From Ascidiella aspersa (Eukaryota): 64,000 nt of DNA. Below are positions 8,190 through 34,904 of the stretch, in pieces. Within the stretch, counting starts at the first letter, position 1. The number at the start of each line of letters is the position of its first letter. The DNA is taken from NCBI GenBank assembly GCA_963924565.1, contig OZ004612.1:10726001-10790000 (forward strand), in the 5' to 3' direction. The notes beneath the pieces were generated by a model. That model was not told where the DNA came from, searched no databases, and saw nothing but the letters and a program-made list of their open reading frames with translations. The translations under genes and the position numbers were made by a program.

Positions 8190-8720
8190 TATGGCCGTCA
8201 ACAACAACCTCTGTCATACTTCAGCACTGCCCAAAAAAACATCGGTCCCCGAAATCTTTATTTGCGCGGGTCGGCGTCGATTCGGAAGCTGTACAAGTGT
8301 AAGGCGGTCTGGTTCTCCGCCATTCGCGCTATATTTACGCGCATCGACCAGTCGATACCAGCGCGCATCCAACTTTCGAAAAACACGGAAAAGGGCGACG
8401 TTTCTCCGACCGATTGCACCGGCTTGCCTTCGCGTTTTCTCCCATCCTAGAATCGAACGTGCGCTTTTTTGCGATCGCTCCCGTTTTTGCCCAGTTATTT
8501 GCGCTTGTTTGTTTCAATGCTGCTTGTACGACTTCCGTTGCGTGGCAGCGCGGCGCGGGGAAACGGGAGCCCTTTTGAATTCGTTTCCAGTTAAAGGCCA
8601 TCGCAGCCGCTCTGGCAAATGCTGACTTCGATTACGCGCAGTTGATTTGTGAACACGGCGTCGGCCTGCACGATTTCAAGTATAGCCGCCGTATCTTAAA
8701 GTCAGAGGCGCTTCTTATAG
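8190..8720. promoter_or_regulatory. CpG-rich non-coding island, possible RADIL upstream promoter or enhancer
   Basis: GC and CpG are sharply higher than in the flanks; no recognisable protein in any frame; about 2 kb upstream of the first coding exon. Confidence 0.3.
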
Positions 8721-16700: not shown

Positions 16701-19700
16701 CGGAAGAATCGCGCGCGCTCGGCTTCGCGCGATCGCCAGGAGTCCAAGGATCGCGGAGGCGCGTCCGAGTCGGAGGGCTCCTCATCCCCCACCAAGAAGA
16801 CCGAGTTGTCGTCGGATGTTAATCTTCCAGGCATCCTCAAGATTTTTGGCGACGCCGTGAGTCCTGGAGCCAACTACAAGAGCGTGATGGCCACGCGCCA
16901 GTCCAACTCCCAGGAGCTGGTCAAGATGGCCCTGCAGCGCTACGGGATTCCCCGGCACCAGGCGCGCGACTTTCTGCTCTGCGAGGTCGTGGGCAGGGTC
17001 CAGGACGGCCAGGACGGCGCCGAAACTTCCGAAAAGGGCCTTAAAGTGAAAGCGGACAAGCGAAAGAGAAATACGAGTGAGTTCCGCCTGTTTGTTGTCC
17101 TACACTTTTACTCACTTTAAGTCGTTGACACTTCGTTGAAAGTCTTTAAATTTAGTTGTATATTGAAAAGTCGAAAAGGAAACATGTTTTGAAAAAATTA
17201 TCGTTGTAAAAACATCATTTTACTATTTTTTATTCTATTTGGTATTCTGTTGTACTTGTTATTGTGTTGAATATATTTTGTTATTGTGTTTAACTATTTG
17301 TTGTTGTGTTGAGGATGGCATTTATACTGTTTTTTTTTACGAATTATATTAAAAAACGTTAAGCCATCCAATTTTAGGCATTTGAGGCTTTAAAAAGCTT
17401 TTTTTAACTGTTTTACTTGGTTTGTTCTTTTGCAACGTCGCCAAACCGCTCGAAACGAAAGTGCTTCTAGATTTAACCGCAGCGCGCTTAAAACAACACT
17501 CTGCTGAAACGTTCCATGTTAAAACTGACACTATCGGTTTATTTGTACAGCGGTAATTTACGCGATACAAAAGTTTCGAGGGTTTTTCCAGTAATAATAA
17601 CTCGATGACTCAACACCAGTGCGCATTTTAGGAAAATCATGCCCTTGGCAATTTAGGCGTCCTTAGACCAGAAATACTTACTGACATACCCTTTTTAAAT
17701 TAGGGAGCGCCTCTCTGGATCTGACAGCCTCACTGGCGGCAGGAGTCGGCGGGGCGAGTTTTCAGGAGGACTACGTGCGCCCCCTGAACGACCACGAGAA
17801 GCCACTCCTCCTCCAGTCCTACTGGAAGCCTTTGGACGGACTCTGCAGGAGATTCGAGATCAGGAGGAGATCTCAGGTAAACTATATATGGATAGTTAAA
17901 TTGACTACATGGAAATGATTTATCTAGGAATTAACAATTAATATCTCAAAACTCAGATTAGAAACAAGCTTGTTTTAGACGTGTTTGGTTAGCGACTTTA
18001 AGCAGATCTGGACCATTCATAAATGTCTTGAAGTTTGAATTACTGGAGTGTTTGACGTTTGCTGGTTATCAAACATAACCTAGTTTTAGTACACCGAAAA
18101 GCCATTGCAGACTCACCGAATCTGTCGATCAATGATGCAAGCAGAGCAGACTAGAAAAACAACTAGCCTGCAGTGAGGTTCGAACTCACGACCTCCGGTC
18201 AAGCCGGGACCGTCGCTCTACCAACTGAGCTATGCAGGCTCAGAAGGGAACGAGTCGAGAAACAACCATACGCCAATGCTTGCTCAATCTGTTAGTACAA
18301 GCAGCTTCATAACGAAGGGGATCGCCAGTATCATATCATAATACAATGAAACATATGTACACACATATATGTGTGCTTACAACTGAGATCTAGCCCTTCT
18401 GAAGCTGCTTTTTGACCAACGATAACGGCTTACGTATTATTAGTACACCGAAAAGCCATTGCAGACTCACCGAATCTGTCGATCAATGATGCAAGCAGAG
18501 CAGACTAGAAAAACAACTAGCCTGCAGTGAGGTTCGAACTCATAACCTAGTTTTAAGCGAATTTTGCAAAAAAATTCGAATCGTGAATCCATCTTAATTA
18601 TTAGTTTGTTTAATTTATTTAAACAATTTTTCAATTTAGGCAGTGATTCAGAAGGTTTTCAAATTAAAAAAAAAAAAAGTAATCGAAATATGTATAAACG
18701 TTTGCGAAATAACGGATGCCCATCAAATGATAGTAATTAAATACTAATTGGCGCCTGACATTGGTCATTTCCAAAATTGGCTTAGCAGCGTTTTAGCTAA
18801 TTGACCCATCAAAGCATACCAAGCAAATTTCTTAAACTTTGTGAAAAATGCCAAACATGCGAATGTACAACTGGTGGTATTTTATCTGTTCTAAACTAAG
18901 TGGTTTATTTCAGGTTTTCAAAAAAGCCGAAAAAGATCACGCAACCAGAGATATCAACAACCAAGCCAGGCGGCTCGTGATGGCCAAATCAAGGTATTAT
19001 TTATTGATTTATTGCCCTAAAACGCCTTGCAAAAGAATTTATAAACATAAATTGACATTGAAATATATGTTGGTACTATATATATAAACTTGACAAAATT
19101 AAAGTTGCCGGAATCGGTATTCCTAAATCTATATATATTTCTTTTATGCTGTTTAAATATGCCTTTTTTGCAGATAATTTACAATAATACACAAATCACT
19201 ACTTTGGATCGTAAATTGTGGCTGAAATTCCTATTTTTTGTATCGGATCGGCACCGATACCACCCTACTATCTAACCAACTATAGTCCTAATACTTCCAC
19301 TTAGCATCTAGTATTGGCTCCGATCCGATATATTCGGACATTCCTACTCTATTATAATAATTGTAATAAACATTACTTTAACGTTTCAGAACAAACATCA
19401 ACGTGGCGCTCAACCAGCCTCAAACCGACAGCGAAGACTCGGAGGCCGAGCCTGAAGTCAAAGCCAACTCTAAAACCGCATCGTCCCAAGCCGAAGCCCC
19501 AAAACCTGCCGCGGTAGAAACGCCCGTTGTCGATTCACCTGCCAAGGAGTCCGCACCTGCGCGCGATACTCAACCGGAAATGGCGCCAATCGATGACGTA
19601 GCTGGTGACGTCACCACCGGAAGTAAAGCGGAAGCGGAGCAGCCTTCGGTGCCCTGCCTGATAACCCTGCAAGGCGACGTCGGCGGCAGCAAGGGCGATA

Positions 19701-22700
19701 GTCTCATACACTATTTAAAGCTGCCGGAAACGCTGATTGGCTGCCAGGCGTCTGACGTCAGACTGGCGGCACGTGACGTCTTTCCGCACCACTGCGTCCT
19801 CAAGCGACGCCTCGAGATCCTGTTCAACGAAAGCGCCGAGTTCGAGGCGATTAAGCGCTGGTGCGTGACCGTGAACCCGCTTCACCCCAAAGCCGAGGTT
19901 TCGGCCAACGGCTTCCGAGTGACATCAGAGTACACGTTGCAGCACGGAGACATGCTCACCATCGGCAAGAACTGCATGTTTATGTACAAGGACCCGGCGT
20001 CCAACGTGAACCTTAGCAATAAGTTCTCGTTTGGCGAGAACAACAAATCCGCGCCCGCGCCCAGCGGCGATTTACCGCGAGATGTCGCTGTCGAGCCGAA
20101 GCCAAAGCTCCGCGAAATCCCGACCGAGTTGTCCTACCAGGTGGAATGCGAGGACGAGGTTTTGAACGCCATCTTTGACTCGGGCAAGGAAATGGACGAA
20201 AGGTGCGCGAGCTACCCGTTCGCGCCTGCTGCCCTCTTGTGTCAGTGTGTGGTGCATTCGTGCCTGAACTTTCGCCTGGAACACAAGAATGACCTGCTTC
20301 TCAAAATCGCGAGCAATTTGCAGACCCTTGTTCTGGTAAACATAACATTGTTAGGTTTTACTTTTAAGTTTACATTGTTGTTTTGATGTAGTTGATTGAT
20401 ATTTTGCTTTTAAAGTTGCACTTGTACATAAAATATTTTTACAAAAAATAAAGTTGACGCAAAACATATGTTATTAATATTTATTGCCTGGGTAAACGCA
20501 CACTTTAAAGCAACCTGTATTGATATTTGTTTCTTTAGAACTCCACCAGAAACGTTTCGGTGCAAGAAATCCAAACGTAAGTGACGCGTTTAAGTTTCAA
20601 CTTTTGTGTTTGAAGTATGTTTATATATTAATAAATGGTTAGGCATTTTGAAGTATAGGTATAGCTATTTTTCTTCCTTCAAGGTGTTCAAGACTTATAT
20701 TGGGGACAGCCAAGTGGTGTAAAATAAACGTATTGTTAAGCAAATAGCAAAATTCTGCCTTATAACAAAATTTATATTTATCGGTAAACTTAAAGTTTCC
20801 GTTTCACTCTATTGCAATACCTTAACAAGCAACACGATATGTCTCAGGAAATTAGAGATTTTAAACCAACTTGTAAGTAATAAAGCGTCTCCTTGGTTCC
20901 TCCAGGTCGTCGGATCCCGAGAAGAACCTCCATCTCCTCCTCCCCTCCCTCCGCCCGGTTGTCTACTGGATGTCCAACTCCTTGGAGATCTTCGAGTTCC
21001 TCCAGAAGGATCTGATGCCGACGCTTCGTGAGAAAGTGGATGATGCGAAACAACGGTAAGCAATTCATTAGTACTATATACTATGAGGGGCCTGTGCACA
21101 CTTTTTAATTTGCTCAATAGGAGCCCGATCTATACTTTCCTGTTTATATGAAAATCAGACTGAAGCTTATGCCCAAGATGGTATTTAGGGATGTTTTTTT
21201 AATCATGCATATGTTAATTACGCCCCTGAATCAATGCGTTTATAAACTTTAACCAGAAAACCATATTCATGTGCCCTCAAATTGAAGCTTAAATAAACTC
21301 ATAGGATATTCTTTCTAACAATATATAAAAGTCCCACCACCGTTGGTGGTAACGTGTATAGTTATCGATACTCGTGGGTTATTTTAAAATGCCCTAAAAA
21401 ATATGTTTATATTTGAAACCTTCTTAGTTTTATTGTAAAACCTGTATCTTCCTTATCATTGCCCCTGTAAATCTTTTGCCAATTTGCCATTTTGCCATTT
21501 TTACCACTCAAGCTTCATCTTATTTCTCGCACATTTTACTTTAGGGGAGAGGTCGACCCGGTATTTTTGGACGAAATCGAGGACTTTGAAATCAACGAGG
21601 AAATTCTCGCGCTTCTCGAGGAAGTCGTCATGTACGCCTTCCAGCAACTTGTTTATTACCTCACAAAGGTCAGCCCTCGTGTGTTGTGACGTGTGTTGTA
21701 GGAATGCAGAGAATGACGTATTTGAACTTGCGTCATAAGGGTTTCTGATGAAAAAGCTTCTGATGTATTAAAAATGGTTCAATTTTCTAAATATAGCGCC
21801 AAAAATGCATAGTGACACCTAATGTTTTTGTTCCAGGGCATTTTAATGAACACATAAAAATAATGCAAAATGCATCTTCGACAATGATGTCTCTTATTTT
21901 TGACTTATTGTTTGACAAATATTTGACTTGCGGGCTAAAAGTCGATCTAAAAGGTGAAAAGCAACCCTCCGGAAGTTTAGCCTATTGACTTTTTAATTGT
22001 CCGAAGGTGGCACCAATAAAAAATACCCTTCTTTTGCTTTTCTGTTTTTGAATTGCAAAATACCGTAAGGATAACCGGCCAGCTTGCCATATAAACAGCA
22101 ACCAAACTGTATATTAATATTTAACGTGCAATTAAGCTTCCTTTATTTTATTTTATTTCTGTCGCAAAGTTTTATTGTTTTCTAAGTAATTTTGCAAGCA
22201 CCCCATATAAACAACAACCTCAGAAACGACACTTTGCCACAGACTCTCTACAGCCACCTGCCGGCGCTGCTCGACTGCAATCCTTTCGCCGAGAACGCGT
22301 CGAACGTGGCCGGCGTTGATCACGTGACCGGCGTGTTCGAGAGCGCTCGCGAGATGGCGTCCACTTATGACGTGAACCAGCACATCTCCGACCAGCTCTT
22401 CGCCTATCTCTTCTTCTTCACCAACATCTCGCTCTTCAACACTCTAATGGAGGACGGTGAGTTTTGTTTGCCGATGGCCTTTTTCTTTTTTGTTCTTTTC
22501 ATTTCGTTTTTTGCTTTTATTTGCGCCGATGGCTTTTAAAACCCCTTTGCCGATTTTTTTAAAGGTGCGCATTATAAGATTTCCCTTCCACTTAATAGGT
22601 TAATAATAATTTATATTATGACTTACGTTTCTCATTTATAGTGGCTAAATCGTTATGTACTTTGTAAAAAAAGGATTGACATAGTATATTGTAGTTGTTT

Positions 22701-25700
22701 TTAATTAGGATATATTGTTAGAACATTCAGTTGTTTATAGGTGTTTTCAAATTGAACTTTGATTTACCATTTATGGGTCCACGAGTGTGAGTGTTAGATA
22801 TCAAAGTTTAAAATCAAGCACACAAGCTGTATTCGTTCGTATCTAGCTGGCGTCAAACCGAATACACTCATATTACAACGAATCATGACACCTCTAATGC
22901 TCACCATGAAAATCAACATTCCGGTTTAGATTGCTTCAATATTTCGGCTTTGAATTGAAACACAAATCTACACAACCCTTTCAGCATCTTTGGTGGCCTG
23001 CGAAGACATATCGTTTCTATTGTGCGCAATGTTTACTTTATTCCTTCCGAGACATACACTGCATGCAAGTTTTATACAGGCCTTTTTTCAAAACTCGCCA
23101 CCTTGTCCATTTCTCAACCTGCTTTAATCGCCCCACACAGACTCGGCACTCAAGTACTACCGGTGGGACATGGGCGCGCGAATACAGGGCAACCTGGAAC
23201 AGGTAGAGACCTGGGCCGACGACGCCGGCTACGACCGACAGTTCTGCACCTACCTGGACAAGGTCTCGTCCCTCGTAACCCTTCTGGCCACGCCCAGGAC
23301 ACAAATCGCGAAGGTGAGGAAAATGTGAAACTAACAGCCGCGTTGCAATTCTCTCGTTTGACCTGAAAATAACTTTTGGGTTTCATTCGCTGAATACATA
23401 GAGTGTCTATTGAATATGCGCCGATTATTCAGTCGGTTTTAGACTTTTGAAATTTAATCCCTTAGGAAAACCTTATCTAATTTTGGTATTAGGAATTCCT
23501 TTTGGAGCCTAGGCCGTGCATTTATAATTGGTCTGATATAAAGCAAAGACAACACTTTTTGATATGGTTATTTATGGTAAGCCTACATTGGAACTATTTA
23601 AAAGTTTCGTTTGAAAACTATGAATGATGCTGACATTAAATACGCATTTAAGCGTAAACCAAATATTTGTATTTTGGTTCAGTATCTTTATGTCGACAAT
23701 CGACATGTTCACACAGGCAACACACTATTGCAGTCATTTACAGACGAGTGCAAGATCATTCGTAATATATGTATCAAATCTTACATATGTGTTGAATCGT
23801 AGAACGGAATTACTATTTCTACGAAGCTGTGAACGTTTCACTGCGATCGTTCGTTCACATCAATTTCACGAATATCTTGTAATTACACCTAATGTAACTC
23901 AACAGAGTTCGTGGTCGGTCTTCCGCCAAACCTTTCCTGCCATCAACCCGTGCCAGCTCCGACACGTCCTGGAAGGCTACCGGTTGCCTAGCAACCAGGT
24001 GAAGCCTCCCTCCTGGAGCCCGAGTCCAGAGGAAGGCGAGGACTCCCTTGACGAGAGTGAGTGCAACCTTGTACTCTGACTTAATAAATTAATAAATTTT
24101 ATCCCTGAAGTCAATTCAGTTATAGGGTTAGCCTTATTCTTTTCGACTTTATTTTTCAATACTTAAAAGTTATCTCTCACCTTTATATGCTTATATAAAT
24201 GATGCTTATTTTGATAATTTTTGACACAGTTTGTTTTTGCGTTAAGATGTTTATACCTCGGGTCCACGCTGAATTTAACAGTTGTTATTTTATGTTTTTA
24301 TTGTACTCGTGTACATGGATCTAACATCACTCTATCAAACGATATTTGTATTCAGATCTGCTCATGGAGAGCTACGACCAGCATCCGCCCCTCATGCTCC
24401 CGGTGAGCGGGACCCGGATCGACTTCGAGCGTTTGCCCGAGGGTCGCTGGTTCAAATCCCTCGTGGACCAAGTGCGCCGGGCGGGGAATCCCCAGGGCGC
24501 GGTCAGAGAGCAGCCCGAAGGCCGCGAGATCGCTTCGGACGCGTCACAGTCGCAGCGTGATCTTCCTAGCAACGGTGATGACGTCACGAGCGAAAAACGT
24601 GACGCGGCGCCGGTGGCCAACGATGACGTCAGAAAACACGTCACCAAATCCAAGCCGGCTAGCGATAGTCCCGGCGCGAACTCAGTGCGTTCCAAATCGT
24701 CGCACCATTTGGGGGAGACCGCGTCCAAGGGGGGTCAAGGGAGAATTGTGTCGTCATCATCCTGCTCGTCGTCATCAAGCGAGCCGGAGGGTTACGTCAT
24801 CAGGCAGCATCGCAGCCGGCACCGCAAGACGAGTGACGTCATAGGCAGGGCGAGTCCATCGCAGGCGATTAACGAGCTACTGATGGAGGACTCGGCAAAG
24901 AAGTCGGATGAGAGGGGCAAGGAGTGCGATGAAGTTCTTCTGCTTCCGATCTCGGAGACGACCTCGGTTCCGACCCAAGTGTCTTCAAACCTGACTGAAG
25001 GTAGAGCACTTTTGTTTAATTTGTTAGAACTTTGGTTAAGTTGTTGTTGGTCAATTTCGCGATACGCATTATTTCTGTTGCAGTAAGATTTCTGCTTGGT
25101 AATATGAAACAAAACTAAAAACTGGAAGTCGATGCTGATGTGCTCTTTTTTAAATCTGCTTCTCTTATTTATTTCCTGTTTTATTTCAATTTCGGCTCAA
25201 TATGGCTTTAAATGTTCTTCCGCACCATGGTTTTTAAGTATAGTAACCTAACAAATGTTCTAAACTGGACCCAAAACACACTCAACAGTGCGAAACCAAT
25301 TTAACAGTTATTATAAAACCACTCTTTTAACTGCAATGGTGATGCGTGAAGAACTCTATGTCGCAAATAAAGTCCAACTTAATTATGTTAAAACATTACC
25401 TTGTCCAGCAGTTAAATCCTCGTCGCCCACTGACGATTCGGACACTTCCAGCAACAAGTCGCAAGGTGGCGCCAAAGGCATGCCCAGGGAGGTGTTTATC
25501 GTCGACATCAAGAAAGGCAAGAACGGGCTCGGTGTTGGACTGGTCGACGGCGCCGTGACGTCACTAGGAACCGCGGGGGTCTTCGTGAGATCCCTGGTGC
25601 CAGACGGGCCGGGCGTTAAGGTACATGATGATGAAAAAAAAGACATTTTAAGCGTTTGTGCTCTACGCCTTGATGTGACTCTACACCAGTGGTCGGCAAA

Positions 25701-27071
25701 CTGTGGGCTTCGGCCCAAATGTGGGCCCCTTTTTAGTGGGCTGCGTGCTATATTTTTATAATTTCAGTTTTGTCATGTAGATGTACTTTTCACCGTACTG
25801 TATTTTAAAAATGTTGTGACTAAGAGTTTTTTTTTGCTTTTGCTTGTTCCATCATAGGGCCACCGTACTATGCACCCCCTAAAAACTATACTTTATTAAA
25901 TTGTTTATGCCAAAAGACTATGCATACTATTGCATGTTTGCGCCGTATGGTCGTATAAACGCTACAAAGGTATTTTTATTAAATGAGGCTATAAACTTTT
26001 CGCACTACACGCAAGATTTTTTAAGATCAAGAGTTTTATGACGTAACTTTGTGACGTCATTCGTTTTACATAGTTGGCCTTCAATGGCTCTGGAAAGAGC
26101 ATTTTGGGCAGCGACAAAAAAGGTTTGCCGACCACTGCTCTTCACTTTATATTTTGTATTAATTTAAACTTGAAGCAACATACTTTGATAACGAAACCAA
26201 TGATAATAGAACCCAAAACTAAGGTTTACAAATAAGTTTAAAAAACTTATTTTGTGCGATAAGAACGACAAACCATTGGTATTCCTATACACTTGTGACA
26301 AGACTCTTTTTACATCCCATTTCAGCACGGCCATTCCAAGCACCACGACGTGATTAAGTGTTGGCTGCAAGAGGGTAGACTTCAGTTGGGTGACAGGATC
26401 CTAGCCGCAAACGGAGTCAGCCTTCTCAACATGTCTTACAATGAGTGAGTCCATTTTTAAGTCAAATCAATCCATCTTTGCGATTTACAAATCCTTTCAA
26501 CGCTTTAAACCTATGTCGGTTATAAGCACATTGAACATTATTAAGACAAAGTATATTTTACGACTGTACTGATTAAAAAGCAAGTAAAAGGAATGAATTA
26601 TTTTCTTTATAATGCACAAACTAGCAATATTCCTAGGTCCAAATGTAAAGCGAGGTATTTTTGTCATTCATATTCCTTGTTAAAGAAAAATAATCCTAGG
26701 CAATATTATGTACTCGAAACTGACGATTTAATTCGATTACATTCTTCGCGAATCGCTACAGTTTGTTTAATCTAATGTCGCTGCACAGTGGAGCCTTAGT
26801 AAGATATAATTGCTTTAATAAACAAATGCAGCCTATGATGCATCGTAATTGTTCCTGGTGATTGGGATCCTAGCGTTTTACTATTCTTCTTCTCACACGC
26901 AAAAAAGCGTCCTGGATAATCCGACCGCATTGTCCTTCTTTGCAGTTAATAAACAATTGTTTTGTCGACAGAGCCACAAAGACGGTCCGTCAGGCCGGCG
27001 ACTACGTTCGTTTGTTGGTGGGGAGATGCGGACAAGAGGTTGCTATGAAGATCACCTCTTCCAGCTGCTGA
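10793..27071 (+). CDS. RADIL: Ras-associating and dilute domain protein (RADIL/RASIP1 family; RA-FHA-DIL-PDZ), 17 coding exons, about 1437 aa
   Basis: Phase-consistent GT-AG exons: 10793-10919, 14399-14564, 15416-15597, 16363-17076, 17704-17876, 18914-18993, 19390-20335, 20539-20576, 20906-21055, 21545-21668, 22243-22456, 23141-23313, 23906-24056, 24356-25000, 25409-25620, 26326-26444, 26972-27071 (4314 nt, ends in TGA). RA domain: PGILKIFGDAVSPGANYKSVMAT...HEKPLLLQSYWKPLDGLCRRFEIR. FHA-like: HHCVL...LQHGDMLTIG..CMFMYKDP. DIL: YWMSNSLE, EEVVMYAFQQLVYYLTK, QLFAYLFFFTNISLFNTLME. C-terminal PDZ: GLGVGLVDG...GVFVRSLVPDGP...GRLQLGDRILAANGVSL. The first exon is the least certain. Confidence 0.92.
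11076..11126 (+). repeat. Degenerate fragment of the same tRNA-like repeat family (B-box half)
   Basis: TGACCGGGGTGGTAAGTTCGAACCTCATCACAGGCTAGATTTTTCTAATCT aligns with the minus strand of about 18147-18202. Confidence 0.55.
14095..14331. mobile_element. Inverted pair of a ~100-bp repeat carrying a Penelope-type minimal hammerhead core
   Basis: Plus arm 14233-14331 reads CTGAAGA-T-GATAC AAGCCC GTATC-GAAACGTC...TCGATCTACTCGACCTTTCTGGCTTTGCAATTCATTATCAAG. A degenerate reverse-complement arm lies at about 14095-14158. Confidence 0.6.
14750..15399 (+). repeat. Intronic minisatellite, ~150-158-bp unit, about 4 copies
   Basis: Anchor GTCAGACCCC recurs at 14901, 15054, 15212 and 15362, with shared TTCCACAACAA...AACAGCGATTAGACAAT...GAAACAACCAT...CACCTAAT. 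Confidence 0.85.
18074..18555 (-). mobile_element. TSD-flanked tRNA-related retroposon-like insertion with partial tandem structure (354-bp unit plus 102-bp repeat)
   Basis: Direct duplication CATAACCTAGTTTTA at 18074-18088 and 18541-18555. Identical internal 102-bp direct repeat at 18087-18188 and 18441-18542. Contains a tRNA-like cloverleaf. Confidence 0.8.
18165..18239 (-). tRNA. tRNA-like cloverleaf (pseudo-tRNA / SINE head; nominal anticodon GGC in a non-canonical loop)
   Basis: Minus strand: GCCTGCA-TA-GCTC AGTTGGTA GAGC-GA-CGGTC CCGGCTT GACCG-GAGGTC-GTGAG TTCGAAC CTCAC-TGCAGGC-T. All four stems pair and the A and B boxes are intact, but position 33 is C and position 37 is T. Probably not a decoding tRNA. 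Confidence 0.55.
25687..26137. mobile_element. Non-autonomous hAT-type MITE
   Basis: TIRs CAGTGGTCGGCAAAC / GTTTGCCGACCACTG; 8-bp flanks CTCTACAC / CTCTTCAC (7 of 8 match). Confidence 0.85.
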
Positions 27072-28531
27072 TAGGATCTTGGCCGCTCACGTGATGCCAG
27101 TCAGGCGTGACCGTTGTTCAGTGACGTCAGATAACTGGCAAGACTTGAATAAAGTTGACCAGAGTTAAACCAGAAAGGAGTTCGCGACATTTGCAGAACG
27201 TTCGAGACTGTTTTTATTGGCATTTCGTTTTATAAACTATATTGATCTTTGTAGCTCTACAAGTGTCACCGATTTACGTTTTCTACGATTTTGCTCAAAA
27301 GTTCCATTTTAAGCTACTTGCTTTCAGTCGGAATGTTTTTATGTCATTTTTTTTATTTTAACAAATCAAACTTAAAAACGGGCTTTTTTGATTTTTTACG
27401 CCCTTGAGAGCTTATCGCATGGCTTTTCAATGTCTTCCAGATTTTACGTTGTTTCGTAGTCGAAACGAAATATCCCTTGATCAGGATTTGCAGTTTCCCT
27501 TTTACACAAGTGTTCACAGCGACAGGAAAAGTTTTTATCCTGATTCGCCGTTTAGCTACTTCTACCCCTTTCCAAAGTGCAATGCCCGCTTTGTTACGTC
27601 ACTTACTAGACTGTTACGTCACACTGTTGCTGGTCCGTGAACTTATTTGATCGCGAAAAGTGCTCGTTTTTGCGATAAGTGTTGCACATTCGTTTGGCGA
27701 TTTTACATAAGTGCTTGAAATATGTCTTATATATAAATATTTTCACGCGACATTTCTCAAATATTTTTAAAAAGCTGCAATGTTTGGTAAAACCCAATGT
27801 AAGCTACGTTGAACCTATAACTACCGTTAAACGTTAAGTTCATTTACAGTTTACACAGTAAGTTTGTTTTGGCGTGTTTTTTTATAATTTGTGGAGAACA
27901 AAGTTTAAATTAAAAGTTTTGTATGTCACGACAAAGCCAAAAAGGTTTAATGAGACTTTTACTTGTCACAATTTCCCTTTATAATTACATAACAGAAAAT
28001 TTTAGTCATAAACGCACTTCAATATACTTAAGAGCTTATTTTCTTCATTGGAATTTATTTAATCGTTCCTTTATACACTTTAACAAGTAGCAAACTGTGT
28101 TAAATAAGGGACTTGGTCCCCCCCAAATATACCGCGTAGGTGATAGTTTGAAAAGTTACACAAAAAAAACTAGCGTTCGTTTTTCATACATTGTTTTGAC
28201 GAAAATAACTCTGACATGGTGTTCTTCGCAAAGGGCAATCGTCTTTGATTTCGTTTTGTACTATCTACTTTTCAAACACCAAATGACTGTTTTTCTCGCT
28301 TTTTCATTAAAACTTATTTGAAAAAGTTTTGCTACAGTTTAGAAATTTGTGAATCAGGACACCATATAACTTTTCGATAAACCTAATGGAAACTGCGACA
28401 AAGAGATTCATTTTTCTAACAGCTTTGTTTTACCGAACCTTGCACTTGGTGGTTGTGCAGTACAATGTCACAATAGGAGTTTTACAATAACTTCGTGCAA
28501 TGTTTACTCGTGCCGTTGTTACCTTAGGCTG

Positions 28532-28614
28532 AATCCCCACCAGTTAGTCTTAAATTGCTAATTCCCGCCAGTTAGTCTTAAAACGCTAATTCCCGCCAGT
28601 TAGTCTTAAAACGC
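28532..28614 (+). repeat. 28-bp tandem repeat, 3 copies
   Basis: Unit CCCGCCAGTTAGTCTTAAAACGCTAATT; CAGTTAGTCT occurs at 28541, 28569 and 28597. Confidence 0.9.
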
Positions 28615-29034
28615 TTTAAAGCAGACTGATACGATTAATCAAGTCAAACGCTCGTTTGTTTTATTGTCGCGTCTCCACCGACCAGACACATGGTTGTTTG
28701 GTCAGGTACTTTACTGCGTTAAAAGATAAAGGCTCTGTTAATAATTTTTCACAACAATTAATACAAGTTTTTTTTGGAAATAACGAAACTTCAACCAGTT
28801 ATGCATATCAAACACACACAAAAAGTGAAAGCAACAAGGCGAAAATATATAAAGCGTTCATTTTAGGTAACAAAAGCCTGAAACCATAAGTTGTTTTTCT
28901 AGGCTGGCCTTGCCACGAAAATCCTGATTAGACTGACCGACTTCGATAGGCATTTTTAAGGCATCATGTGTGGTGGGTTTTATAAACGCACAGCGGAGTA
29001 TAAACATTCAATCGAATACAATCTATAGCGATAT

Positions 29035-31962
29035 CTACTCCTGGCTAGTTGCACAGCACCAGCGACGCAATCTTGCTCCCCGGCGGAGTTTAATTTCCTG
29101 CCTGCAGCGGGTAATCTGATTCTGGCACGTCGCCAATTTGTCGAAAGGTGTCGGAGAAACTCGCATTTCCTTGCGAAAAAGTCCGAGGGCACTTCTAAAG
29201 TCAGCCAACTCTAGTTTTTGTACGGCACAGTTCTCGTAACAGTCGGCACACCATATGCTGCTGTAGTCTTTTACCAAGTTCAACGCTTTAGCGGCGCGTT
29301 CGTAATACGTGTATGCTGCATTCTTTTTGTCCTGCCTTTTGTACATGGTGGCTAGACTGTGTAGACAATATCCGTACGTAGTATCATTCGTTTTATCCAT
29401 CAACTTTTCTTTAAATAGCTTTTCACAATACCTGAGTTCTCTTATGTGGTAGGCAATCGCTAAATTGTAATCGTTTTGCATATATGTGCAAAAAGACAAT
29501 TGTGAAAAAGCTACAGCTAATTCCTTGTAACGCCCTGTCACAGCAAAGCCAACGGCGGATATTTCAAAATTCATCACTGCTTCGTCAAATTTGTTTAAAT
29601 TTGTTCGACAAATACCAATGTTGAAATGTGACCTGGAAAGATTTAGTATGCCGACCCACTTGTTGATAGACTTCACTTCAAACGAGACGTCTTCTAGTAT
29701 TGTGGGTTCGCTTTCCTCCTCGGCTAGTTGAAGTAGTGCTTTATATTTGTTCGTGATTACCGGACTGTTCAACAAGTCACAGCATAAGCCCATTTGTAAC
29801 ATAGCGCCTTTATTATTGTTTAACTTTGTGTTACACAATGCCATGTGGGATAAGTAAAATACAGTCCTGAGATCAACAATTTTGTCTTGAGTTAAGCACC
29901 TTTGCAAGAAATATGCTTTATTTAAGTTGTCAGCCGCTTCTTGGTAGAATTCACGAGATTCCAGATTTACGCCGACCAAACCGATTAGTTCCGGTTTGTA
30001 ATATTTATCCGAAAATTGTTCTGACCGTTTTAAACAACTGATTGCGCCATCGTAGTTGGTATTTGATAACTGACAGATTCCTTCAAACAAAAACCAATAC
30101 CACAATTTCGATTTTGGCACGGAGTTGTTCTTTGCGTAACGTTTCACAACCTTATTATAGTAAGCCAAAGCTTTTTCGCCATAGTCTTGTACAAGCAGCA
30201 GACCAACTGTGTAAACGGCCCAACAAAATTCCGGTTCGACAAGTTTATGTGCGTTCTGAGCCAGCTTATTGTCTTCAATTACCGCTAACGCTTTGGCAAA
30301 TTTCACTTGGGAGAAATAGTTGTAAGCAATAAACCAGCAACACTCGAATTTCTTCTGGGAACGTTTGGAGTTGGAAAGTCCCAACATCATCTTATGACAG
30401 ACGTCCAAAGATTTTTGGTACATTTGCAGTGAATAGAATATCGCAATGTCGCCGAGAACTTCATAGCTTCTTACCATGTCGTCTAGCTGGACACCAAATT
30501 TTTTCTTTAGAAATATCTGAAGATCGAAGATAGTTCTAAGGCAATCGACGGCGTTTTCCTCACCCAAAGACCGTAACAGAACGCCGTCGTTTTCGTTTGA
30601 TGCACTGTGAAGATCCACCTGTCGGTCGTTTTCCAAATAGAGATTGAGTCTCACTTCACACGCAAGGGTTACAGCGAACAGCAATCTATCTCGAAATTCC
30701 CCGTCGAAATAGTCGAGTTTGGCCAACTCTCTAATGATCCCAAGCGACGAATTTATTTTCGGCACATGAATTCGGCCCAACGCACTGATAGGTAACGTTA
30801 CGCTGCGGTATACCACTTTTTTAATATCCACGTGTCGCGTGCTGTATTGTGTTTGCTCAAAGTCTGTTTTCCACTTCGTGAGATCATCTTGAATCTGATC
30901 AACGATAAGTTTTCTTGCAATATCATCGCTTTCTCTCTGCAATAGAGTCAAAGACCGGTTCTTAAAATCGTCGAAAATCGCGCGATCTCCCTCTACAAAG
31001 CATGTTTTCGCAAGGATGTCGGAAAGGTGATATCCGTTCTTAATGTCACATTCTCGATTAAGAAAGGTAAGCATTGCTGCGACTGGCTGAATCAGCTCGG
31101 TTTTCCACGGCTTGTCTTGAGTCTCAGCCCGCCCCAGCGGAAACTTGCACGCGTGTGGCATCATTCCATCAAAGGAGATGCCACGAGGCGTGTAGGCGTC
31201 GTAAAAGCTGAAATCCGACTGGTTGTTCAGGTACGGAAGGTACACCGAGGGTATAATCGTTTCTCCGAGACCGATTATAATTAGTTGAAAGATTACCGCT
31301 ACCCATCGAAAATAGTCGAGTACCTTTTGTTGATCCTCTCCTGACTCCACGCTGCTGTCGTCCAGCAAGTAAATATGTTCAAAGTCAGAGTATGGTGTAA
31401 TTTCCTCCCGTGCAAGCGATCCCATTCCAACTAAAGCGTATCGGCAAGGCGGTTCACCTTTTATTTTGACACAATATTGCATTAGATCGCGCATTATGGC
31501 TGTGTATTTTTCCGTAATTTTCTTTTGAATGGTTTCGACGCGCTGTACTCTTTTTTGAGCAGTAAGCTCTTTGTTCATTGTCTTCATTTCTTCACGGGCA
31601 TACTGCCTCATTTCACCCGCTTGTTTCTTAAATAGTTCGATGTGTTCACCTAAATCGGAGATCTGTTTGGCGGTTTCTGCCATTGTAAAGACGTTTAAAC
31701 AAAGATTGCTGAAGTCGCTGTCAATTTCTGCTGTATTTTCAGGTTTTCGCGCACAGGCTGCCTTAAATAGCACCGCGCTTCTTATTAGAGACGTTTGCTT
31801 TTCGTATAAGTCTTTGGATCTCTCTGCCAGTTTGTGGTAGGCCAGCCCCAGTTGATGAATAACGGCCGCCGTCTTTGACACATCTTTTTCCCTCCCACCA
31901 ATAAAACAAAGTTTCCTGAGTTCAGAAGAAATCTTTTCCACGCGCTTTTCATCTTCAGTCAT
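29035..31962 (-). CDS. Nucleotidyltransferase (pol-beta superfamily, GlnD/GlnE/DUF294-like)-TPR repeat protein, about 975 aa, one large coding exon
   Basis: Uninterrupted 2.9-kb ORF; the track starts at TTG 31974, the first ATG is at 31962. Motif CRYALVGMGSLAREEITPYSDFEH fits hG[GS]x(10)DhE. It is followed by a helical region (VDIKKVVYR...LLFAVTLACEVRLNLY) and TPR-like repeats (e.g. SHFNIGICRTNLNKFDEAVMNFE, CLHSLATMYKRQDKKNAAYTYYERA). A 10-nt upstream coding exon at 32348-32357 is possible. Confidence 0.88.
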   Translation of the reverse strand: MTEDEKRVEKISSELRKLCFIGGREKDVSKTAAVIHQLGLAYHKLAERSKDLYEKQTSLIRSAVLFKAACARKPENTAEIDSDFSNLCLNVFTMAETAKQISDLGEHIELFKKQAGEMRQYAREEMKTMNKELTAQKRVQRVETIQKKITEKYTAIMRDLMQYCVKIKGEPPCRYALVGMGSLAREEITPYSDFEHIYLLDDSSVESGEDQQKVLDYFRWVAVIFQLIIIGLGETIIPSVYLPYLNNQSDFSFYDAYTPRGISFDGMMPHACKFPLGRAETQDKPWKTELIQPVAAMLTFLNRECDIKNGYHLSDILAKTCFVEGDRAIFDDFKNRSLTLLQRESDDIARKLIVDQIQDDLTKWKTDFEQTQYSTRHVDIKKVVYRSVTLPISALGRIHVPKINSSLGIIRELAKLDYFDGEFRDRLLFAVTLACEVRLNLYLENDRQVDLHSASNENDGVLLRSLGEENAVDCLRTIFDLQIFLKKKFGVQLDDMVRSYEVLGDIAIFYSLQMYQKSLDVCHKMMLGLSNSKRSQKKFECCWFIAYNYFSQVKFAKALAVIEDNKLAQNAHKLVEPEFCWAVYTVGLLLVQDYGEKALAYYNKVVKRYAKNNSVPKSKLWYWFLFEGICQLSNTNYDGAISCLKRSEQFSDKYYKPELIGLVGVNLESREFYQEAADNLNKAYFLQRCLTQDKIVDLRTVFYLSHMALCNTKLNNNKGAMLQMGLCCDLLNSPVITNKYKALLQLAEEESEPTILEDVSFEVKSINKWVGILNLSRSHFNIGICRTNLNKFDEAVMNFEISAVGFAVTGRYKELAVAFSQLSFCTYMQNDYNLAIAYHIRELRYCEKLFKEKLMDKTNDTTYGYCLHSLATMYKRQDKKNAAYTYYERAAKALNLVKDYSSIWCADCYENCAVQKLELADFRSALGLFRKEMRVSPTPFDKLATCQNQITRCRQEIKLRRGARLRRWCCATSQE

Positions 31963-34904
31963 TTTCAAAGCCAAATTACAAGCTCACACAAAGAAAAATA
32001 CAGTATACCATTCTTCTCTATATTTCTAAATATATTAGAGTAGACATTGTTCGAACTTCTTTTACAACAAGTATAGTTATAGCCTTGCCCTGCTTAATTA
32101 GTCCAACTGGTTTCGGTAAATCCTTTTTCCATAGGCCTACTTAATTATAGCATACCGATTGGGTCAGTAAGGTGTTTCATTTCTCTGAATTGCCAACCTT
32201 AAAGCAACAACGCTTTTTGAACGAAAAATTACACTTGAACAGTTATTAGTGCGCGCACAATATGCAATCAATTATTAACTTTTATTTGTTTAACACACAA
32301 CGTTCCCTCAAAGTTAAACATGTGTGGCGATAAAAAAGTAATCTTACCGTTAGGCATGGCGATGTCTGTTTTTACTGCAATGACTCAAACAACAAATAAA
32401 TCAAATAAATCTAAACAATAAATCAGACAGTTTTACCATAGAGCACTAATGCTCTATGGTTTTACGATATATTTAAATTTCTTAGAGTGCATCGATTTTT
32501 TTTTTAGTTGAAGCAATTTTAAAATTTAAATTTTCTCCGTGAATATTTAACTATATTACTCAGAAGTAAAACAAATCATTGTGATTTAAATAGTTGAAAC
32601 AGAGTGTCGTACGATAACCCAAAAAACAATAATTAAATATACTATATTGAATCACGTATAGGCCCTATAGTTAGGTATTTCTTGTTTTTACTGCAATTAA
32701 TTGTCACTGTAAGTTTTTTGCCTTTCGTTCTTGCGCGCGCATAATGGCGCGACGCATCGCTTAGGCACAATCACTAATTAGGCGCGGTAGTGCGCGCCTC
32801 TCACGTGAAGAATGCAATTAGCTTCTACCCTTTGGGGCCACTTTAGTTTCTATATAAAGCTTTTGTTTTGCGGTGCACTGGTGCAGTCATCACCAACATC
32901 GTTACCGAAGACACTATACGCGCCAGACATCAAACTTTGGAATGTTTTCATTTTTTTCGCAACCTTTGGTTTGTATATGAAGTATTGTGCGCTAAACTTT
33001 TCCTTTTTCGTCTTACAGAAAACCTGTACCTATACTGATATTGCTTTCTACTGTGCGAAAATTGTATGTTCGCAATTGCCATTGATTTCGCAAGCAAGTA
33101 ACAGAAGTGCCGAGTATTACAAAGCTTGATTTCTACAGTCACCGTTTGTAAACTTATTGGGTTTCTTTTTTTTTCGCTTCATTTTCATTTGTCTTTTTAG
33201 CAACACTATACATAATTAAGGTTTTAGCTTAAGGTGACAGCTATATAGCAAGAGTCTCCATTCAAATTGCTTTTACAGCCAATTAAAATGTAACTATAAT
33301 TCGTGTCTCGCAATGGAAAACCTTCGAAATACGAAAATTGAAATCGATAATGAAATAATTTAGACAACAAAGCGCGTCGAGTTCCCACATAAAATGTCCA
33401 ATTAAGCCGCATGCGACCCGCAGGCTGCACGTTTGATACACTCGAACTATACTCTATTTTCTATAGCCAGGGTTAATATCTGCAAGGACCTAAAATTACG
33501 CTACCCTGTAATGACCAGCGCAGATTAAGGATTTTGGTTTCGGGGATGCAACGAAAATTTTAAGAATGATATTACAAACTTATGTCATAAAATAAATATT
33601 CCTAAAAACACCTGTTGTTCTCGAGCGAACTCGTGCGCAAAATGCAGCTCAAAATCATTCTGTCACGCAAAGTGCGAAAAACATTGGGTTTATTTGGCTG
33701 AAATTGGACGAACTTTTTACTTAGAGGAGACGTGACGTTTTTAGGCAAATTAAGGAGATTCAGATATTGTTCGAAAAAACTTTCTCGAATTTGAGTCGCA
33801 TGGCACAACCTTCCGTCGTATGTATAGCGCATTTGGGCTGAATTGATCCCTTAAAATAAAATACTAAAAATTAAAATGTAGTTTTTTGGCCTGGTGCCTC
33901 ACTTGAATCCACCCTATGCTTCCTGGTTGTGACGTAGAGTTTTGTGCCCGTATTTCTTTAATGCAGGCTTTTACTCATTTCTTCTATAGAGAAATTATTG
34001 GATTTACAAATTTCGAATTGTCAAAGTTTTAAATATTATAGGCCTACCATATGTCCTCTTTTCTCAAGAAAAGTGAATCGTCCTCCGAGGACGCTCAAAA
34101 ATGCCCAAATGTCCTCTTTTTGCGCATTTCGAGTTAGTTGCTTATACTTTCAACAATTTTTTTTCCAAGAAAATTACTGCAGCCATGAACATCGCTAGTT
34201 TAAAAAAGGTTTTCCAACAAATTGTAAGTTGATCTCGTTAAAAAAAATATCATTTCTTATTGGCAAAAGTTAAGGGAACCGCAAAGTATTCATGGGCTTA
34301 ATCTGAAAAATAAATTTGATTTGTTGTTTTTGTTTCTACTTTCGTTTTACTTGCCGTCAAAAAATGTCTTCTTTTTTGGTGCTAAAAATATGGTAGCCCT
34401 ACAATAATAGCTCATAATGGGCCTGTCTATGAATCAATAAGTGGTAATCTTTTTTGACTAATAGGTTGTGTAACGTGCTTAATCGGGAAACCGAAAATGT
34501 GCCGAAAAGCCCGAACCCATGCCGTTTAACCGGACAATACTCTTTTGCTTGTGATTTCCAGAGGTAGTATAATTAATGTTAACAACACAAGGTGCTGGCA
34601 TAATTGGATTATATGCAACATTACCACTTTAAACTAAATAAGAAACAACGGGAGTTAAGTTTGAATATCGGGTAAAGGTATCCACTGGATAAAATGGTAC
34701 GACTCCTAGACGTACTTAAACTGAAAAGTTTACCTTATCACAAGGCATAAGCCATCAACCCATTTATATTAACTGGACGAAAGAATACATTGTTATAGTA
34801 AGTTCGACGAAGAACTCAGTAAGATAAAAATCAATGAGACAAACTAAGTATTAACCTAAATATAGGCATTTGTTTAGAAAGTAGGCTATTATTATGTTTT
34901 TGAC

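What the first reader, a model, noticed from the sequence alone, without database searches (positions are those of the whole stretch)
29035..31974. Bacterial-style nucleotidyltransferase-TPR protein in an animal genome: candidate horizontally acquired sensor-effector
Seen: a 2.9-kb uninterrupted coding exon among genes with 4-17 exons. It has an N-terminal TPR-like hairpin, an intact pol-beta NTase signature (G185-S186...D197-x-E199 in ORF-track numbering, likely third acid D269 in GISFDG), a helical domain starting VDIKK, and about 450 aa of TPR-like repeats. Established: the GSxxRxE...SDxD/E signature plus helical domain is typical of the bacterial protein-modifying NTases GlnD (uridylyltransferase), GlnE (adenylyltransferase) and DUF294, not of animal cGAS/OAS/Mab21/poly(A) polymerase. 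Enzyme-plus-TPR layouts are common in immune and conflict proteins. Inference: a ligand-gated protein NMPylase or nucleotide-signal synthase, perhaps acquired from an intracellular bacterium and used in innate immunity. I recall similar DUF294-TPR architectures in endosymbiotic bacteria, but this needs a search.
Basis: partly seen in the sequence, partly recalled or inferred. Interest (0 to 1): 0.88.

Follow-up and report, generated by a model that had tools for sequence, protein, structure and literature searches.

The report
Animal GlnE/DrrA-type AMPylase–TPR gene family
This intact, intronless gene in a sea-squirt-like genome encodes a bacterial-style protein-AMPylating enzyme fused to a TPR repeat array. 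It is one of at least 47 copies of a family also expanded in lancelets and soft corals and shared with amoeba-dwelling bacteria, so it is an old, undescribed animal enzyme family rather than a recent bacterial import.

Summary
Window 29035-31974 (-) is one uninterrupted ORF of 975 aa from the ATG at 31962. It has Pfam DUF294 and TPR_12 hits above threshold and an intact G-x11-D-x-E motif. The AlphaFold model of aa 1-556 matches the Legionella DrrA AMPylase domain (Z 21.5) and both GlnE domains (Z 18), far above all other hits. The C-terminal 435 aa fold as a TPR superhelix.

The HGT reading is only partly right. This genome holds at least 47 intronless paralogues, mostly in a tandem cluster at C6:0.7-2.7 Mb. 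The copies form a tunicate clade (100/100) nested in a clade with amphioxus (99/98). Octocorals also carry expansions. Bacterial relatives are Neochlamydia/Parachlamydiaceae (the published NEX2 family) and a few Holosporaceae-type endosymbionts. Any transfer was therefore ancient and at family level.

The catalytic residues are invariant in all 273 members examined. The TPR half evolves much faster than the enzyme half. The gene has host-like read depth, only in-frame indel variants and sparse RNA reads.

Best reading: a TPR-targeted protein NMPylase, possibly with an immune or conflict role. First readers of this scan noted the same family at four other places in this genome. I found no paper describing the animal family.

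The parts
29035..31962 (-). Complete single-exon CDS of 975 aa. ATG at 31962-31960, TAG stop at 29037-29035.
   Evidence: No stop codon or frameshift. The polymorphic indels inside it are 12 nt and 3 nt, both in frame.
31648..31962 (-). N-terminal TPR-like helical hairpins, aa 1-105.
   Evidence: AF2 model pLDDT 80-94 over this part. VIA matches to LGN and IFIT1 TPRs at Z 8-10.
31459..31650 (-). Two long helices linking the N-terminal hairpins to the NTase core, aa about 104-168.
   Evidence: DSSP helices 104-127 and 135-168. This part lies inside the DrrA-aligned range 62-490.
30973..31455 (-). Pol-beta-fold nucleotidyltransferase core, aa about 170-330. It contains the Pfam DUF294 match.
31378..31422 (-). 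Catalytic motif G-x11-D-x-E within GMGSLAREEITPYSDFE (ORF G185...D197-x-E199).
   Evidence: Invariant in A1 and in all 273 members checked. It is the same motif class as GlnE and DrrA, G-X11-D-X-D (PMC12409994).
31168..31170 (-). Candidate third catalytic carboxylate, D269 in ORF numbering (D265 from the ATG), in SFDG.
   Evidence: Invariant in 273 of 273 members. Its catalytic role is inferred. The model is of low confidence just after it, at aa 267-272.
30493..30927 (-). Alpha-helical domain following the NTase core, aa about 346-490, of the GlnE/DrrA/DUF294_C (KNTase_C clan) type.
   Evidence: VIA match to DrrA 210-341 at Z 10.1. The homologue P0003 passes the Pfam DUF294_C cut-off. The query itself gives no DUF294_C hit.
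29038..30342 (-). C-terminal TPR superhelix, aa 541-975, about 20 helices. This is the fast-evolving part.
   Evidence: AF2 pLDDT 70. Foldseek hits to LGN/Pins/KLC/Rap TPRs at E 1e-7, TM up to 0.72. Pfam TPR_12. Only 15-18% identical to own paralogues.
28391..29034 (-). Probable 3' UTR. It includes a 28-nt x3 tandem repeat (28532-28615) that varies in copy number.
   Evidence: Sparse RNA reads of the same orientation as those over the ORF. TRF. AATAAA at about 28660. The transcript end is not mapped.

Best explanation
The ORF is a functional, divergent, dispersed member of a large family of intronless animal genes. Each protein has the same layout: short N-terminal TPR hairpins, a GlnE/DrrA-type adenylyltransferase module (pol-beta NTase core with G-x11-D-x-E plus a helical domain), and a C-terminal TPR superhelix.

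Shown: the fold, the intact and invariant catalytic motif, the family size and tandem arrangement, the taxon spread (tunicates, amphioxus, octocorals; Neochlamydia/Parachlamydiaceae and a few Holosporaceae-type endosymbionts), its place in a tunicate clade nested with amphioxus, a constrained enzyme half beside a fast-evolving TPR half, and low-level transcription.

Inferred: the enzyme transfers AMP (or another NMP) from an NTP to a hydroxyl side chain of a protein, as GlnE does to glutamine synthetase and DrrA does to Rab1. The variable TPR array would select or sense the target. The expansion pattern suggests a role in immunity or another genetic conflict. The family most likely entered animals from bacteria long ago, at or before the chordate ancestor, rather than recently in this lineage.
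For: Pfam DUF294 and TPR_12 pass their cut-offs. The AF2 model has pLDDT 80.5 and pTM 0.83. By Foldseek only GlnE (1v4a, 3k7d) and DrrA (6yx5_B) reach E<=1e-5, and the next hits have E>0.02. VIA-align gives DrrA Z 21.5 over 312 of 339 residues and GlnE Z 18.4 and 18.3, while aminoglycoside NTases reach only Z about 7.5. The G, S, D, E and third D are invariant in 273 of 273 members. The genome has at least 47 scored paralogues (112 candidates); 44 of the 47 matches contain no stop and their open frames run from 500 to 1114 aa, most near 1000. In the careful ML tree the own-genome clade has 100/94, the tunicate clade 100/100 and the chordate clade 99/98. Among cluster paralogues dN/dS is 0.30-0.58 for the NTase half and 0.44-1.18 for the TPR half. 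The query's NTase half is 43-47% identical to paralogues and its TPR half 15-18%. Depth is equal on the ORF and flanks in two DNA runs, the ORF carries only in-frame indel alleles, and RNA reads lie in a single orientation over the ORF. Homologues are named from Branchiostoma, octocorals, Neochlamydia, Parachlamydiaceae and Holosporaceae. The family has 2297 representatives at E<=1e-3.
Against: No biochemical data exist for any member, so the substrate, the nucleotide and even catalysis itself are inferred from distant relatives at 12-14% identity. RNA support is thin: 49 reads from about 6% of one run, many only partly aligned, and the library's strandedness is not on record. The higher dN/dS of the TPR half may partly reflect repeat misalignment, and it mostly stays below 1. 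No immune-type signalling domain (Death, TIR, NACHT) is present in this copy. The direction of transfer is not resolved: the outgroup branch is very long and the basal nodes have 87-94 SH-aLRT only. Many homologues are unnamed, so the taxon range may be wider than stated.
Confidence: 0.6

Rival explanations
1. The gene is a recent horizontal acquisition from an intracellular bacterium, or bacterial contamination or a chimeric assembly, in this one lineage.
For: It is intronless. The enzyme type is bacterial. Homologues exist in Holosporaceae and Parachlamydiaceae.
Against: Paralogues lie across three contigs of this genome, at least 47 of them. The nearest relatives are tunicate and then amphioxus proteins, with clade supports of 100/100 and 99/98. 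The best bacterial identity is only 38% over 183 aa. The gene is flanked by RA/FHA and plectin exons. Depth matches the flanks in two independent DNA runs. GC is 0.39-0.43, close to the neighbourhood.
Confidence: 0.02
2. The NTase does not modify proteins. Instead it makes a nucleotide second messenger (like cGAS or CD-NTases) or nucleotidylates a small molecule or nucleic acid (like ANT/KNTase or MNT enzymes).
For: All are pol-beta NTases with the same carboxylate triad. Aminoglycoside NTases do align, at Z about 7.5 over 230 residues. Canonical DUF294 proteins have no proven substrate.
Against: The only strong structural matches are the protein AMPylases GlnE and DrrA, at Z 18-21.5 over more than 300 residues including the helical domain. 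No Mab21, OAS or CD-NTase hit appears in Pfam, PADLOC or the fold search.
Confidence: 0.15
3. It is a protein NMPylase with a housekeeping or regulatory role (a TPR plus AMPylase layout as in FICD), not an immune or conflict role. In that case this isolated, divergent copy has a function distinct from the tandem cluster.
For: This copy is a singleton next to ordinary genes and far from the cluster. It sits on a long branch (0.59) and its TPR array cannot be aligned with those of its paralogues. It carries no immune signalling domain.
Against: It has no one-to-one orthologue in Ciona or Clavelina, because it groups with own-genome paralogues. The family-wide pattern of lineage-specific tandem expansion with variable repeats is typical of conflict genes.
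Confidence: 0.2
4. It is a decaying or non-functional copy, or a pseudo-enzyme acting only as a TPR scaffold.
For: RNA coverage is very low and the TPR region is highly divergent.
Against: The 2.9-kb frame is open. All catalytic residues are kept. The population indels in the ORF are 12 nt and 3 nt, while flanking indels include 1, 2 and 4 nt.
Confidence: 0.05

Closest known systems
DrrA/SidM AMPylase (ATase) domain of Legionella pneumophila (PDB 6yx5, 3l0i)
   Same: It is the best structural match, at Z 21.5 over 312 of 339 residues. It has the same G-x11-D-x-[D/E] motif and the same NTase core plus helical domain. It is an effector-type enzyme of an intracellular bacterium. A weak Pfam SidM_N signal appears in homologue P0001 (26 bits against a cut-off of 27).
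   Different: Identity is about 14%. DrrA continues into a Rab GEF domain and a PI4P-binding domain, not TPRs. It is a single secreted effector, not a host-encoded multigene family.
GlnE (glutamine synthetase adenylyltransferase), N- and C-terminal NTase domains (PDB 1v4a, 3k7d)
   Same: The fold matches at Z 18.4 and 18.3, with the same motif and helical domain. GlnE carries out AMP transfer to a tyrosine.
   Different: GlnE has two tandem NTase modules and a PII-responsive regulatory region and has no TPRs. The NCBIfam GlnE models score 12-13 bits against cut-offs of 625-724.
Neochlamydia NEX2 family (F-box + DUF294 + C-terminal TPR; Domman et al. 2014, PMC4209131) and Holosporaceae 'Namur' NTase-TPR proteins
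   Same: They share the NTase-then-TPR order and are true sequence homologues, at 30-38% identity in the NTase module. They are also expanded to tens of copies per genome.
   Different: They are bacterial and usually carry an N-terminal F-box (or OTU, methyltransferase or ankyrin domains), presumably acting on the host. The animal proteins have N-terminal TPR hairpins instead and form their own clade.
Canonical bacterial DUF294 proteins (cNMP-binding + CBS + DUF294 + DUF294_C) and GlnD
   Same: The Pfam DUF294 model matches. Databases name the animal relatives 'Protein-PII uridylyltransferase N-terminal domain-containing'.
   Different: The query has no CBS, cNMP, HD or ACT domains. Canonical DUF294 and GlnD/GlnE genes from proteobacteria were not retrieved by the family profile at E<=1e-3 and sit on a 2.7-substitution branch.
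FICD/HYPE (animal TPR + Fic AMPylase)
   Same: The functional analogy is a TPR module coupled to a protein AMPylase in an animal (PMC12409994).
   Different: The catalytic fold is unrelated (Fic versus pol-beta NTase). FICD is single-copy, ER-anchored and conserved.
Lineage-expanded repeat-containing innate-immune receptor families of marine invertebrates (NLR/NACHT- or NB-ARC-TPR, TRADD-N/Death expansions; PMC8195603)
   Same: The evolutionary pattern is the same: tandem, lineage-specific expansions in amphioxus, cnidarians and other marine invertebrates, with a variable repeat array attached to an effector domain.
   Different: There is no STAND NTPase and no Death, TIR or TRADD-N domain here. 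The effector is an ATase-type NTase.

Membership tests
GlnE/DrrA-type adenylyltransferase (ATase) class of pol-beta NTases | G-x11-[D/E]-x-[D/E] catalytic motif | tested here: met
   GMGSLAREEITPYSDFE has G185, 11 residues, then D197-F-E199. The motif is invariant in 273 members. Motif definition from PMC12409994.
GlnE/DrrA-type adenylyltransferase (ATase) class of pol-beta NTases | NTase alpha/beta core followed by the characteristic helical domain (overall fold) | tested here: met
   VIA Z 21.5 (DrrA), 18.4 and 18.3 (GlnE) over 309-317 residues. The next unrelated hits have Z<=10. Foldseek probability 1.0.
GlnE/DrrA-type adenylyltransferase (ATase) class of pol-beta NTases | Third catalytic carboxylate on the neighbouring strand | tested here: inconclusive
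   D269 (SFDG) is invariant. The model is of low confidence at aa 267-272 and no superposition of side chains was possible.
GlnE/DrrA-type adenylyltransferase (ATase) class of pol-beta NTases | NMP transfer to a protein hydroxyl | not testable with these tools
   Needs an enzyme assay.
Pfam DUF294 / DUF294_C | Scores above the gathering cut-offs | tested here: met
   DUF294 scores 37.8 bits against 21. DUF294_C is not detected in the query at E<=1, but homologue P0003 scores 23.9 against 22.5.
Canonical DUF294 proteins | cNMP-binding and CBS domains N-terminal to the NTase | tested here: not met
   No such Pfam hits. The N-terminus is made of TPR-like hairpins.
GlnD (PII uridylyltransferase) | Full-length equivalog score; HD and ACT domains | tested here: not met
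   NCBIfam GlnD models score 13.6-17.8 bits against cut-offs of 519-799. No HD or ACT hits.
Neochlamydia NEX2 | N-terminal F-box with mid-protein DUF294 and C-terminal TPR | tested here: not met
   The DUF294 and C-terminal TPR parts are present and homologous, but the query has no F-box. It is related, not a member.
cGAS/OAS/Mab21/CD-NTase | Mab21/OAS-type NTase fold and family HMM match | tested here: not met
   No Pfam or PADLOC hit. Absent from the significant fold matches.
TPR repeat proteins | Helix-turn-helix repeats forming a superhelix | tested here: met
   TPR_12 passes its cut-off. The AF2 C-terminal model matches LGN/Pins/KLC TPR domains at E 1e-7.

The most novel reading that the evidence does not exclude
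Tunicates, amphioxus and octocorals carry tens to hundreds of germline-encoded ATase-TPR proteins. On this reading they form a previously unrecognised class of innate-immune or conflict sensor-effectors. The variable TPR arrays would recognise microbial or altered-self ligands, and the GlnE/DrrA-type domain would respond by AMPylating a pathogen or host target. That would be an animal counterpart, and an evolutionary relative, of the AMPylating effectors used by intracellular bacteria.
Probability: 0.3. Interest if true: 0.85.

Novelty: new variant of a known kind. Interest (0 to 1): 0.6.

Why it matters
The 2025 AMPylation review that I read here (PMC12409994) treats the ATase (G-x11-D-x-D) class only through bacterial GlnE and the Legionella effector SidM/DrrA, and names FICD as the sole eukaryotic Fic-domain AMPylase; SelO is named as an AMPylase conserved from bacteria to humans in another abstract (PMC12663964). 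A host-encoded ATase family with invariant catalytic residues, present in many copies in three marine animal groups, would add a third class of animal AMPylase. It would also suggest that nucleotidylation is used on the host side of host-microbe conflicts. The shared ancestry with expanded families in amoeba endosymbionts (Neochlamydia NEX2, Holosporaceae) is a concrete case for studying exchange of effector-like genes between intracellular bacteria and eukaryotes. The claim is directly testable with a recombinant NTase module.

Tried and rejected
The genomic context and organism of the many unnamed homologues could not be checked. I treat 'unkA' rows as tunicate only because they fall in the 100/100 clade with Ciona and Clavelina.
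- The listing of cluster members gave no names.
- A direct phmmer search of PDB sequences found only marginal TPR hits. The relation to GlnE and DrrA needed the fold search.
- The family profile A1 does not retrieve canonical DUF294, GlnD or GlnE from proteobacterial genomes. Outgroups had to be added by MAFFT, and their third-Asp region did not align. The resulting root is weak.
- PADLOC gave only E>1e-3 noise.
- dN/dS between the query and its nearest paralogues is saturated, with dS undefined.
- Literature searches for DUF294 or uridylyltransferase with tunicate, amphioxus, TPR or HGT terms found nothing on the animal family. The library holds only CC-licensed PMC papers and bioRxiv preprints.
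- The 2026 paper on tunicate HGT (PMC13390645) does not mention this family.
- I rejected these readings: contamination, recent HGT, a GlnD orthologue (despite the database names), and a cGAS-like enzyme.
Full report
OBSERVATION

The window holds a single uninterrupted ORF at 29035-31974 on the minus strand. The listing tool starts it at a TTG, giving 979 aa. The first ATG is at 31962, giving 975 aa, and an in-frame TGA lies at 31986-31984. Pfam gives DUF294 (PF03445) at ORF aa 140-223 with 37.8 bits against a cut-off of 21, and TPR_12 with 34.2 bits against 30.1. NCBIfam gives only sub-threshold N-terminal matches to GlnD and GlnE models, at 13-18 bits against cut-offs of 519-799. They are invariant in an alignment of the enzyme half with ten relatives (A1). 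The window has no N. GC over the ORF is 0.39-0.43, close to its surroundings.

FOLD

An AlphaFold2 model of aa 1-556 counted from the ATG, built on A1, has mean pLDDT 80.5 and pTM 0.83. In Foldseek against the PDB only four chains reach E<=1e-5. They are the N-terminal domain of E. coli GlnE (1v4a), its C-terminal adenylylation domain (3k7d, two chains) and Legionella DrrA bound to Rab8a (6yx5_B). The next hits are designed repeat proteins at E>0.02.

Re-alignment with VIA-align gives the following:
- DrrA: Z 21.5 (312 aligned of 339, rmsd 3.6, model 62-490).
- GlnE: Z 18.4 and 18.3.
- Helical domain of DrrA alone: Z 10.1 for model 346-490.
- Aminoglycoside nucleotidyltransferases: Z about 7.5.
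- Model aa 1-105: resembles LGN and IFIT1 TPR hairpins at Z 8-10.

The motif GMGSLAREEITPYSDFE is a G-x11-D-x-E. This is the signature that a 2025 review gives for the ATase class, GS-ATase/GlnE and SidM/DrrA (PMC12409994).

The C-terminal 435 aa were modelled with the C-terminal halves of eleven paralogues (A2). They fold as about 20 helices with pLDDT 70. They match the LGN/Pins, KLC, Rap and consensus-TPR superhelices at E about 1e-7.

The architecture is therefore TPR hairpins, two long helices, ATase core, helical domain, then TPR superhelix.

FAMILY IN THIS GENOME

A six-frame search of the window's own assembly (308.6 Mb, 75 contigs; the window is C6:10,726,001-10,790,000) scored 47 matches out of 112 candidates. 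Of these, 44 contain no stop; their open frames run from 500 to 1114 aa, most near 1000 aa. Most lie head-to-tail on one strand between C6:0.7 and 2.7 Mb. A pair sits at C6:28.08 Mb and a few are on C2 and C3.

The gene under study is an isolated copy. Its neighbours are RA and FHA exons of a RADIL-like gene and a plectin-repeat gene. Its best paralogue is 47% identical over aa 11-561, and the TPR halves are only 15-18% identical.

Among the cluster paralogues the enzyme half is 85-98% identical with dN/dS 0.30-0.58. The TPR half is 52-79% identical with dN/dS 0.44-1.18. Repeat misalignment and a two-fold difference in dS between the halves, possibly from gene conversion, make these numbers rough.

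First readers of this scan flagged the same family at four other places in this genome: s1-790817, s1-790846, s1-793701 and s1-793700. Two of these fall in the cluster that I found.

IS THE GENE REAL AND ALIVE?

Two DNA runs of the same species cover the ORF and its flanks at the same depth, about 52 and about 100. They carry roughly 1-2% substitutions. Inside the ORF the only indels are 12 nt and 3 nt, whereas indels outside it include 1, 2, 4 and 6 nt.

One RNA-seq run of the species, of which only about 6% was read, placed 49 reads. Depth of 1-3 lies over 28391-30557 and 31346-31542, always with the first mate on the + strand. Reads of the opposite orientation lie below 28390, which fits the 3' end of a convergent neighbour. 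This shows weak transcription, not a gene model. No splice joint was seen in the ORF, but coverage is too thin to exclude one.

RELATIVES ELSEWHERE

A search of 5.8 billion proteins gave 917 hits among the scored candidates. The named hits were all tunicate, Ciona intestinalis and Clavelina lepadiformis. A profile search of 1.84 billion cluster representatives found 2297 at E<=1e-3 and 762 at E<=1e-30. The ESM Atlas neighbours are clusters described as eukaryote, commonest Chordata, plus one Chlamydiota DUF294-TPR cluster.

Scanning one genome per bacterial species found one locus, in Holosporaceae bacterium 'Namur'. That ORF has 1295 aa with an NTase followed by TPRs. It is 38% identical over query aa 112-279, including GSLAREEITPYSDFE and FDGMMPxACKxPLG. 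That 1.9-Mb genome has at least 11 such ORFs. Only 4 of 121 sampled genomes of its order and 1 of 41 of its class have any.

Searching with the Holosporaceae enzyme module returned, after itself, dozens of Branchiostoma proteins, octocoral proteins (Paramuricea, Xenia, Dendronephthya) and Parachlamydiaceae MAG proteins. Searching with an octocoral member added many more octocoral-like copies and named Neochlamydia proteins carrying F-box Pfam families. These are the NEX2 family of Domman et al. 2014, which has an F-box, a mid-protein DUF294 and C-terminal TPRs in 50 members (PMC4209131).

The G, S, D, E and third D are invariant in all 273 members that I aligned.

PHYLOGENY

I aligned the module (profile positions 100-490) to the A1 profile and thinned each group by identity to 61 rows. 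The rows left out were near-duplicates, at 50% identity or more within the unnamed tunicate-like and Branchiostoma sets and 60% or more within the own genome.

The careful IQ-TREE run used LG+C20+F+G4 PMSF. Its bootstrap had not fully settled. It gives:
- The three own-genome rows together: 100/94.
- A tunicate clade (own, Ciona, Clavelina and unnamed long-contig rows): 100/100, on a long stem of 1.12.
- That clade inside a clade with all nine Branchiostoma rows, Dendronephthya P0214 and four unnamed rows: 99/98.
- Holosporaceae, Parachlamydiaceae, most unnamed short-contig rows and a Paramuricea/Xenia clade lie outside.

I then added four canonical DUF294 and two GlnD/GlnE-like sequences from proteobacteria as an outgroup. 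The root fell among Holosporaceae paralogues. However, the outgroup branch is 2.7 substitutions per site, the basal supports are 87-94 SH-aLRT only, and the tree is a quick one.

I read this as follows. The tunicate genes descend from a gene already present in the chordate ancestor, or earlier. The wider ATase superfamily is bacterial, so an ancient bacterium-to-animal transfer is the more likely origin, at about 60% by my estimate. The reverse direction into endosymbionts is not excluded.

MECHANISM

Shown: a GlnE/DrrA-like fold with an intact, universally conserved catalytic motif, joined to a rapidly diverging TPR superhelix, in a tandemly expanded host gene family.

Inferred from GlnE and DrrA: NMP transfer (AMP most likely) to a Tyr, Ser or Thr of a protein. 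The TPR array would bind the target or an activating ligand.

Inferred from the evolutionary pattern only: an immune or conflict role.

This copy has no Death, TIR or NACHT domain, and PADLOC gives nothing significant.

KNOWN OR NEW

Databases auto-name the amphioxus and Clavelina proteins 'Protein-PII uridylyltransferase N-terminal domain-containing'. The membership tests for GlnD fail. In the searchable literature only 22 papers mention DUF294, and none concerns animals. A 2026 survey of tunicate HGT does not list the family. The AMPylation review covers the ATase class only through bacterial enzymes. The bacterial NEX2 family is published. I therefore rate this a new variant of a known kind.

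LIMITS

- Hit lists are capped at 120, so other animal phyla may carry the family.
- No biochemical evidence exists for any member.

Noticed in passing
window 28532-28615: A 28-nt tandem repeat in three copies lies in the probable 3' UTR. DNA runs X1 and X2 and RNA run X3 carry an allele 60-62 nt shorter, so this is a copy-number polymorphism and not an intron.
   Followed up: partly
window 32725-33120: A high-copy repeat lies about 750 bp upstream of the gene. Its word depth is 1,400-14,000, against about 50-100 around it, and many loose read ends occur there. It is probably a transposable element.
   Followed up: no
window 31963-31995: A pyrimidine run followed by AG (tttttctttgtgtgAG) lies about 20 nt before the ATG, next to the in-frame TGA. 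It may be a splice or SL trans-splice acceptor. Too few reads were available to test this.
   Followed up: no
G000:C6:0.7-2.7 Mb (loci L004-L012) and C6:28.08 Mb (L002, L003): A large tandem cluster of about 1000-aa intronless paralogues lies here. In these copies the synonymous divergence of the NTase half (about 0.13) is roughly half that of the TPR half (about 0.30). This hints at gene conversion of the enzyme half or at repeat misalignment.
   Followed up: partly
L013-L030, L038-L046 (endosymbiont genomes G001, G141, G109): Holosporaceae 'Namur' and two other genomes of its order carry 3 to more than 11 NTase-TPR ORFs each, some of 2,000-3,700 aa. Of the other 118 genomes sampled from the order, one (G103) gives a single weak match (E 8e-6) and 117 give none. 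They look like an expanded effector family.
   Followed up: partly
proteins P0130, P0250, P0253, P0171, P0202, P0142, P0134: Relatives show other architectures. Some have several NTase modules in one protein, for example P0130 with 5 stretches and P0250 with 3 stretches in 3112 aa. Parachlamydiaceae have methyltransferase plus NTase fusions. There is also an ankyrin fusion, and an amphioxus protein is listed with precomputed (unverified) PF00431 CUB and PF00057 LDLa families.
   Followed up: no
window 16391-25761 (+) and 27800-28390: RA-domain and FHA-domain exons of a RADIL/afadin-like gene lie on the + strand. RNA reads of the opposite orientation end just below the NTase-TPR gene's 3' region, so the two genes appear to be transcribed convergently.
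   Followed up: no
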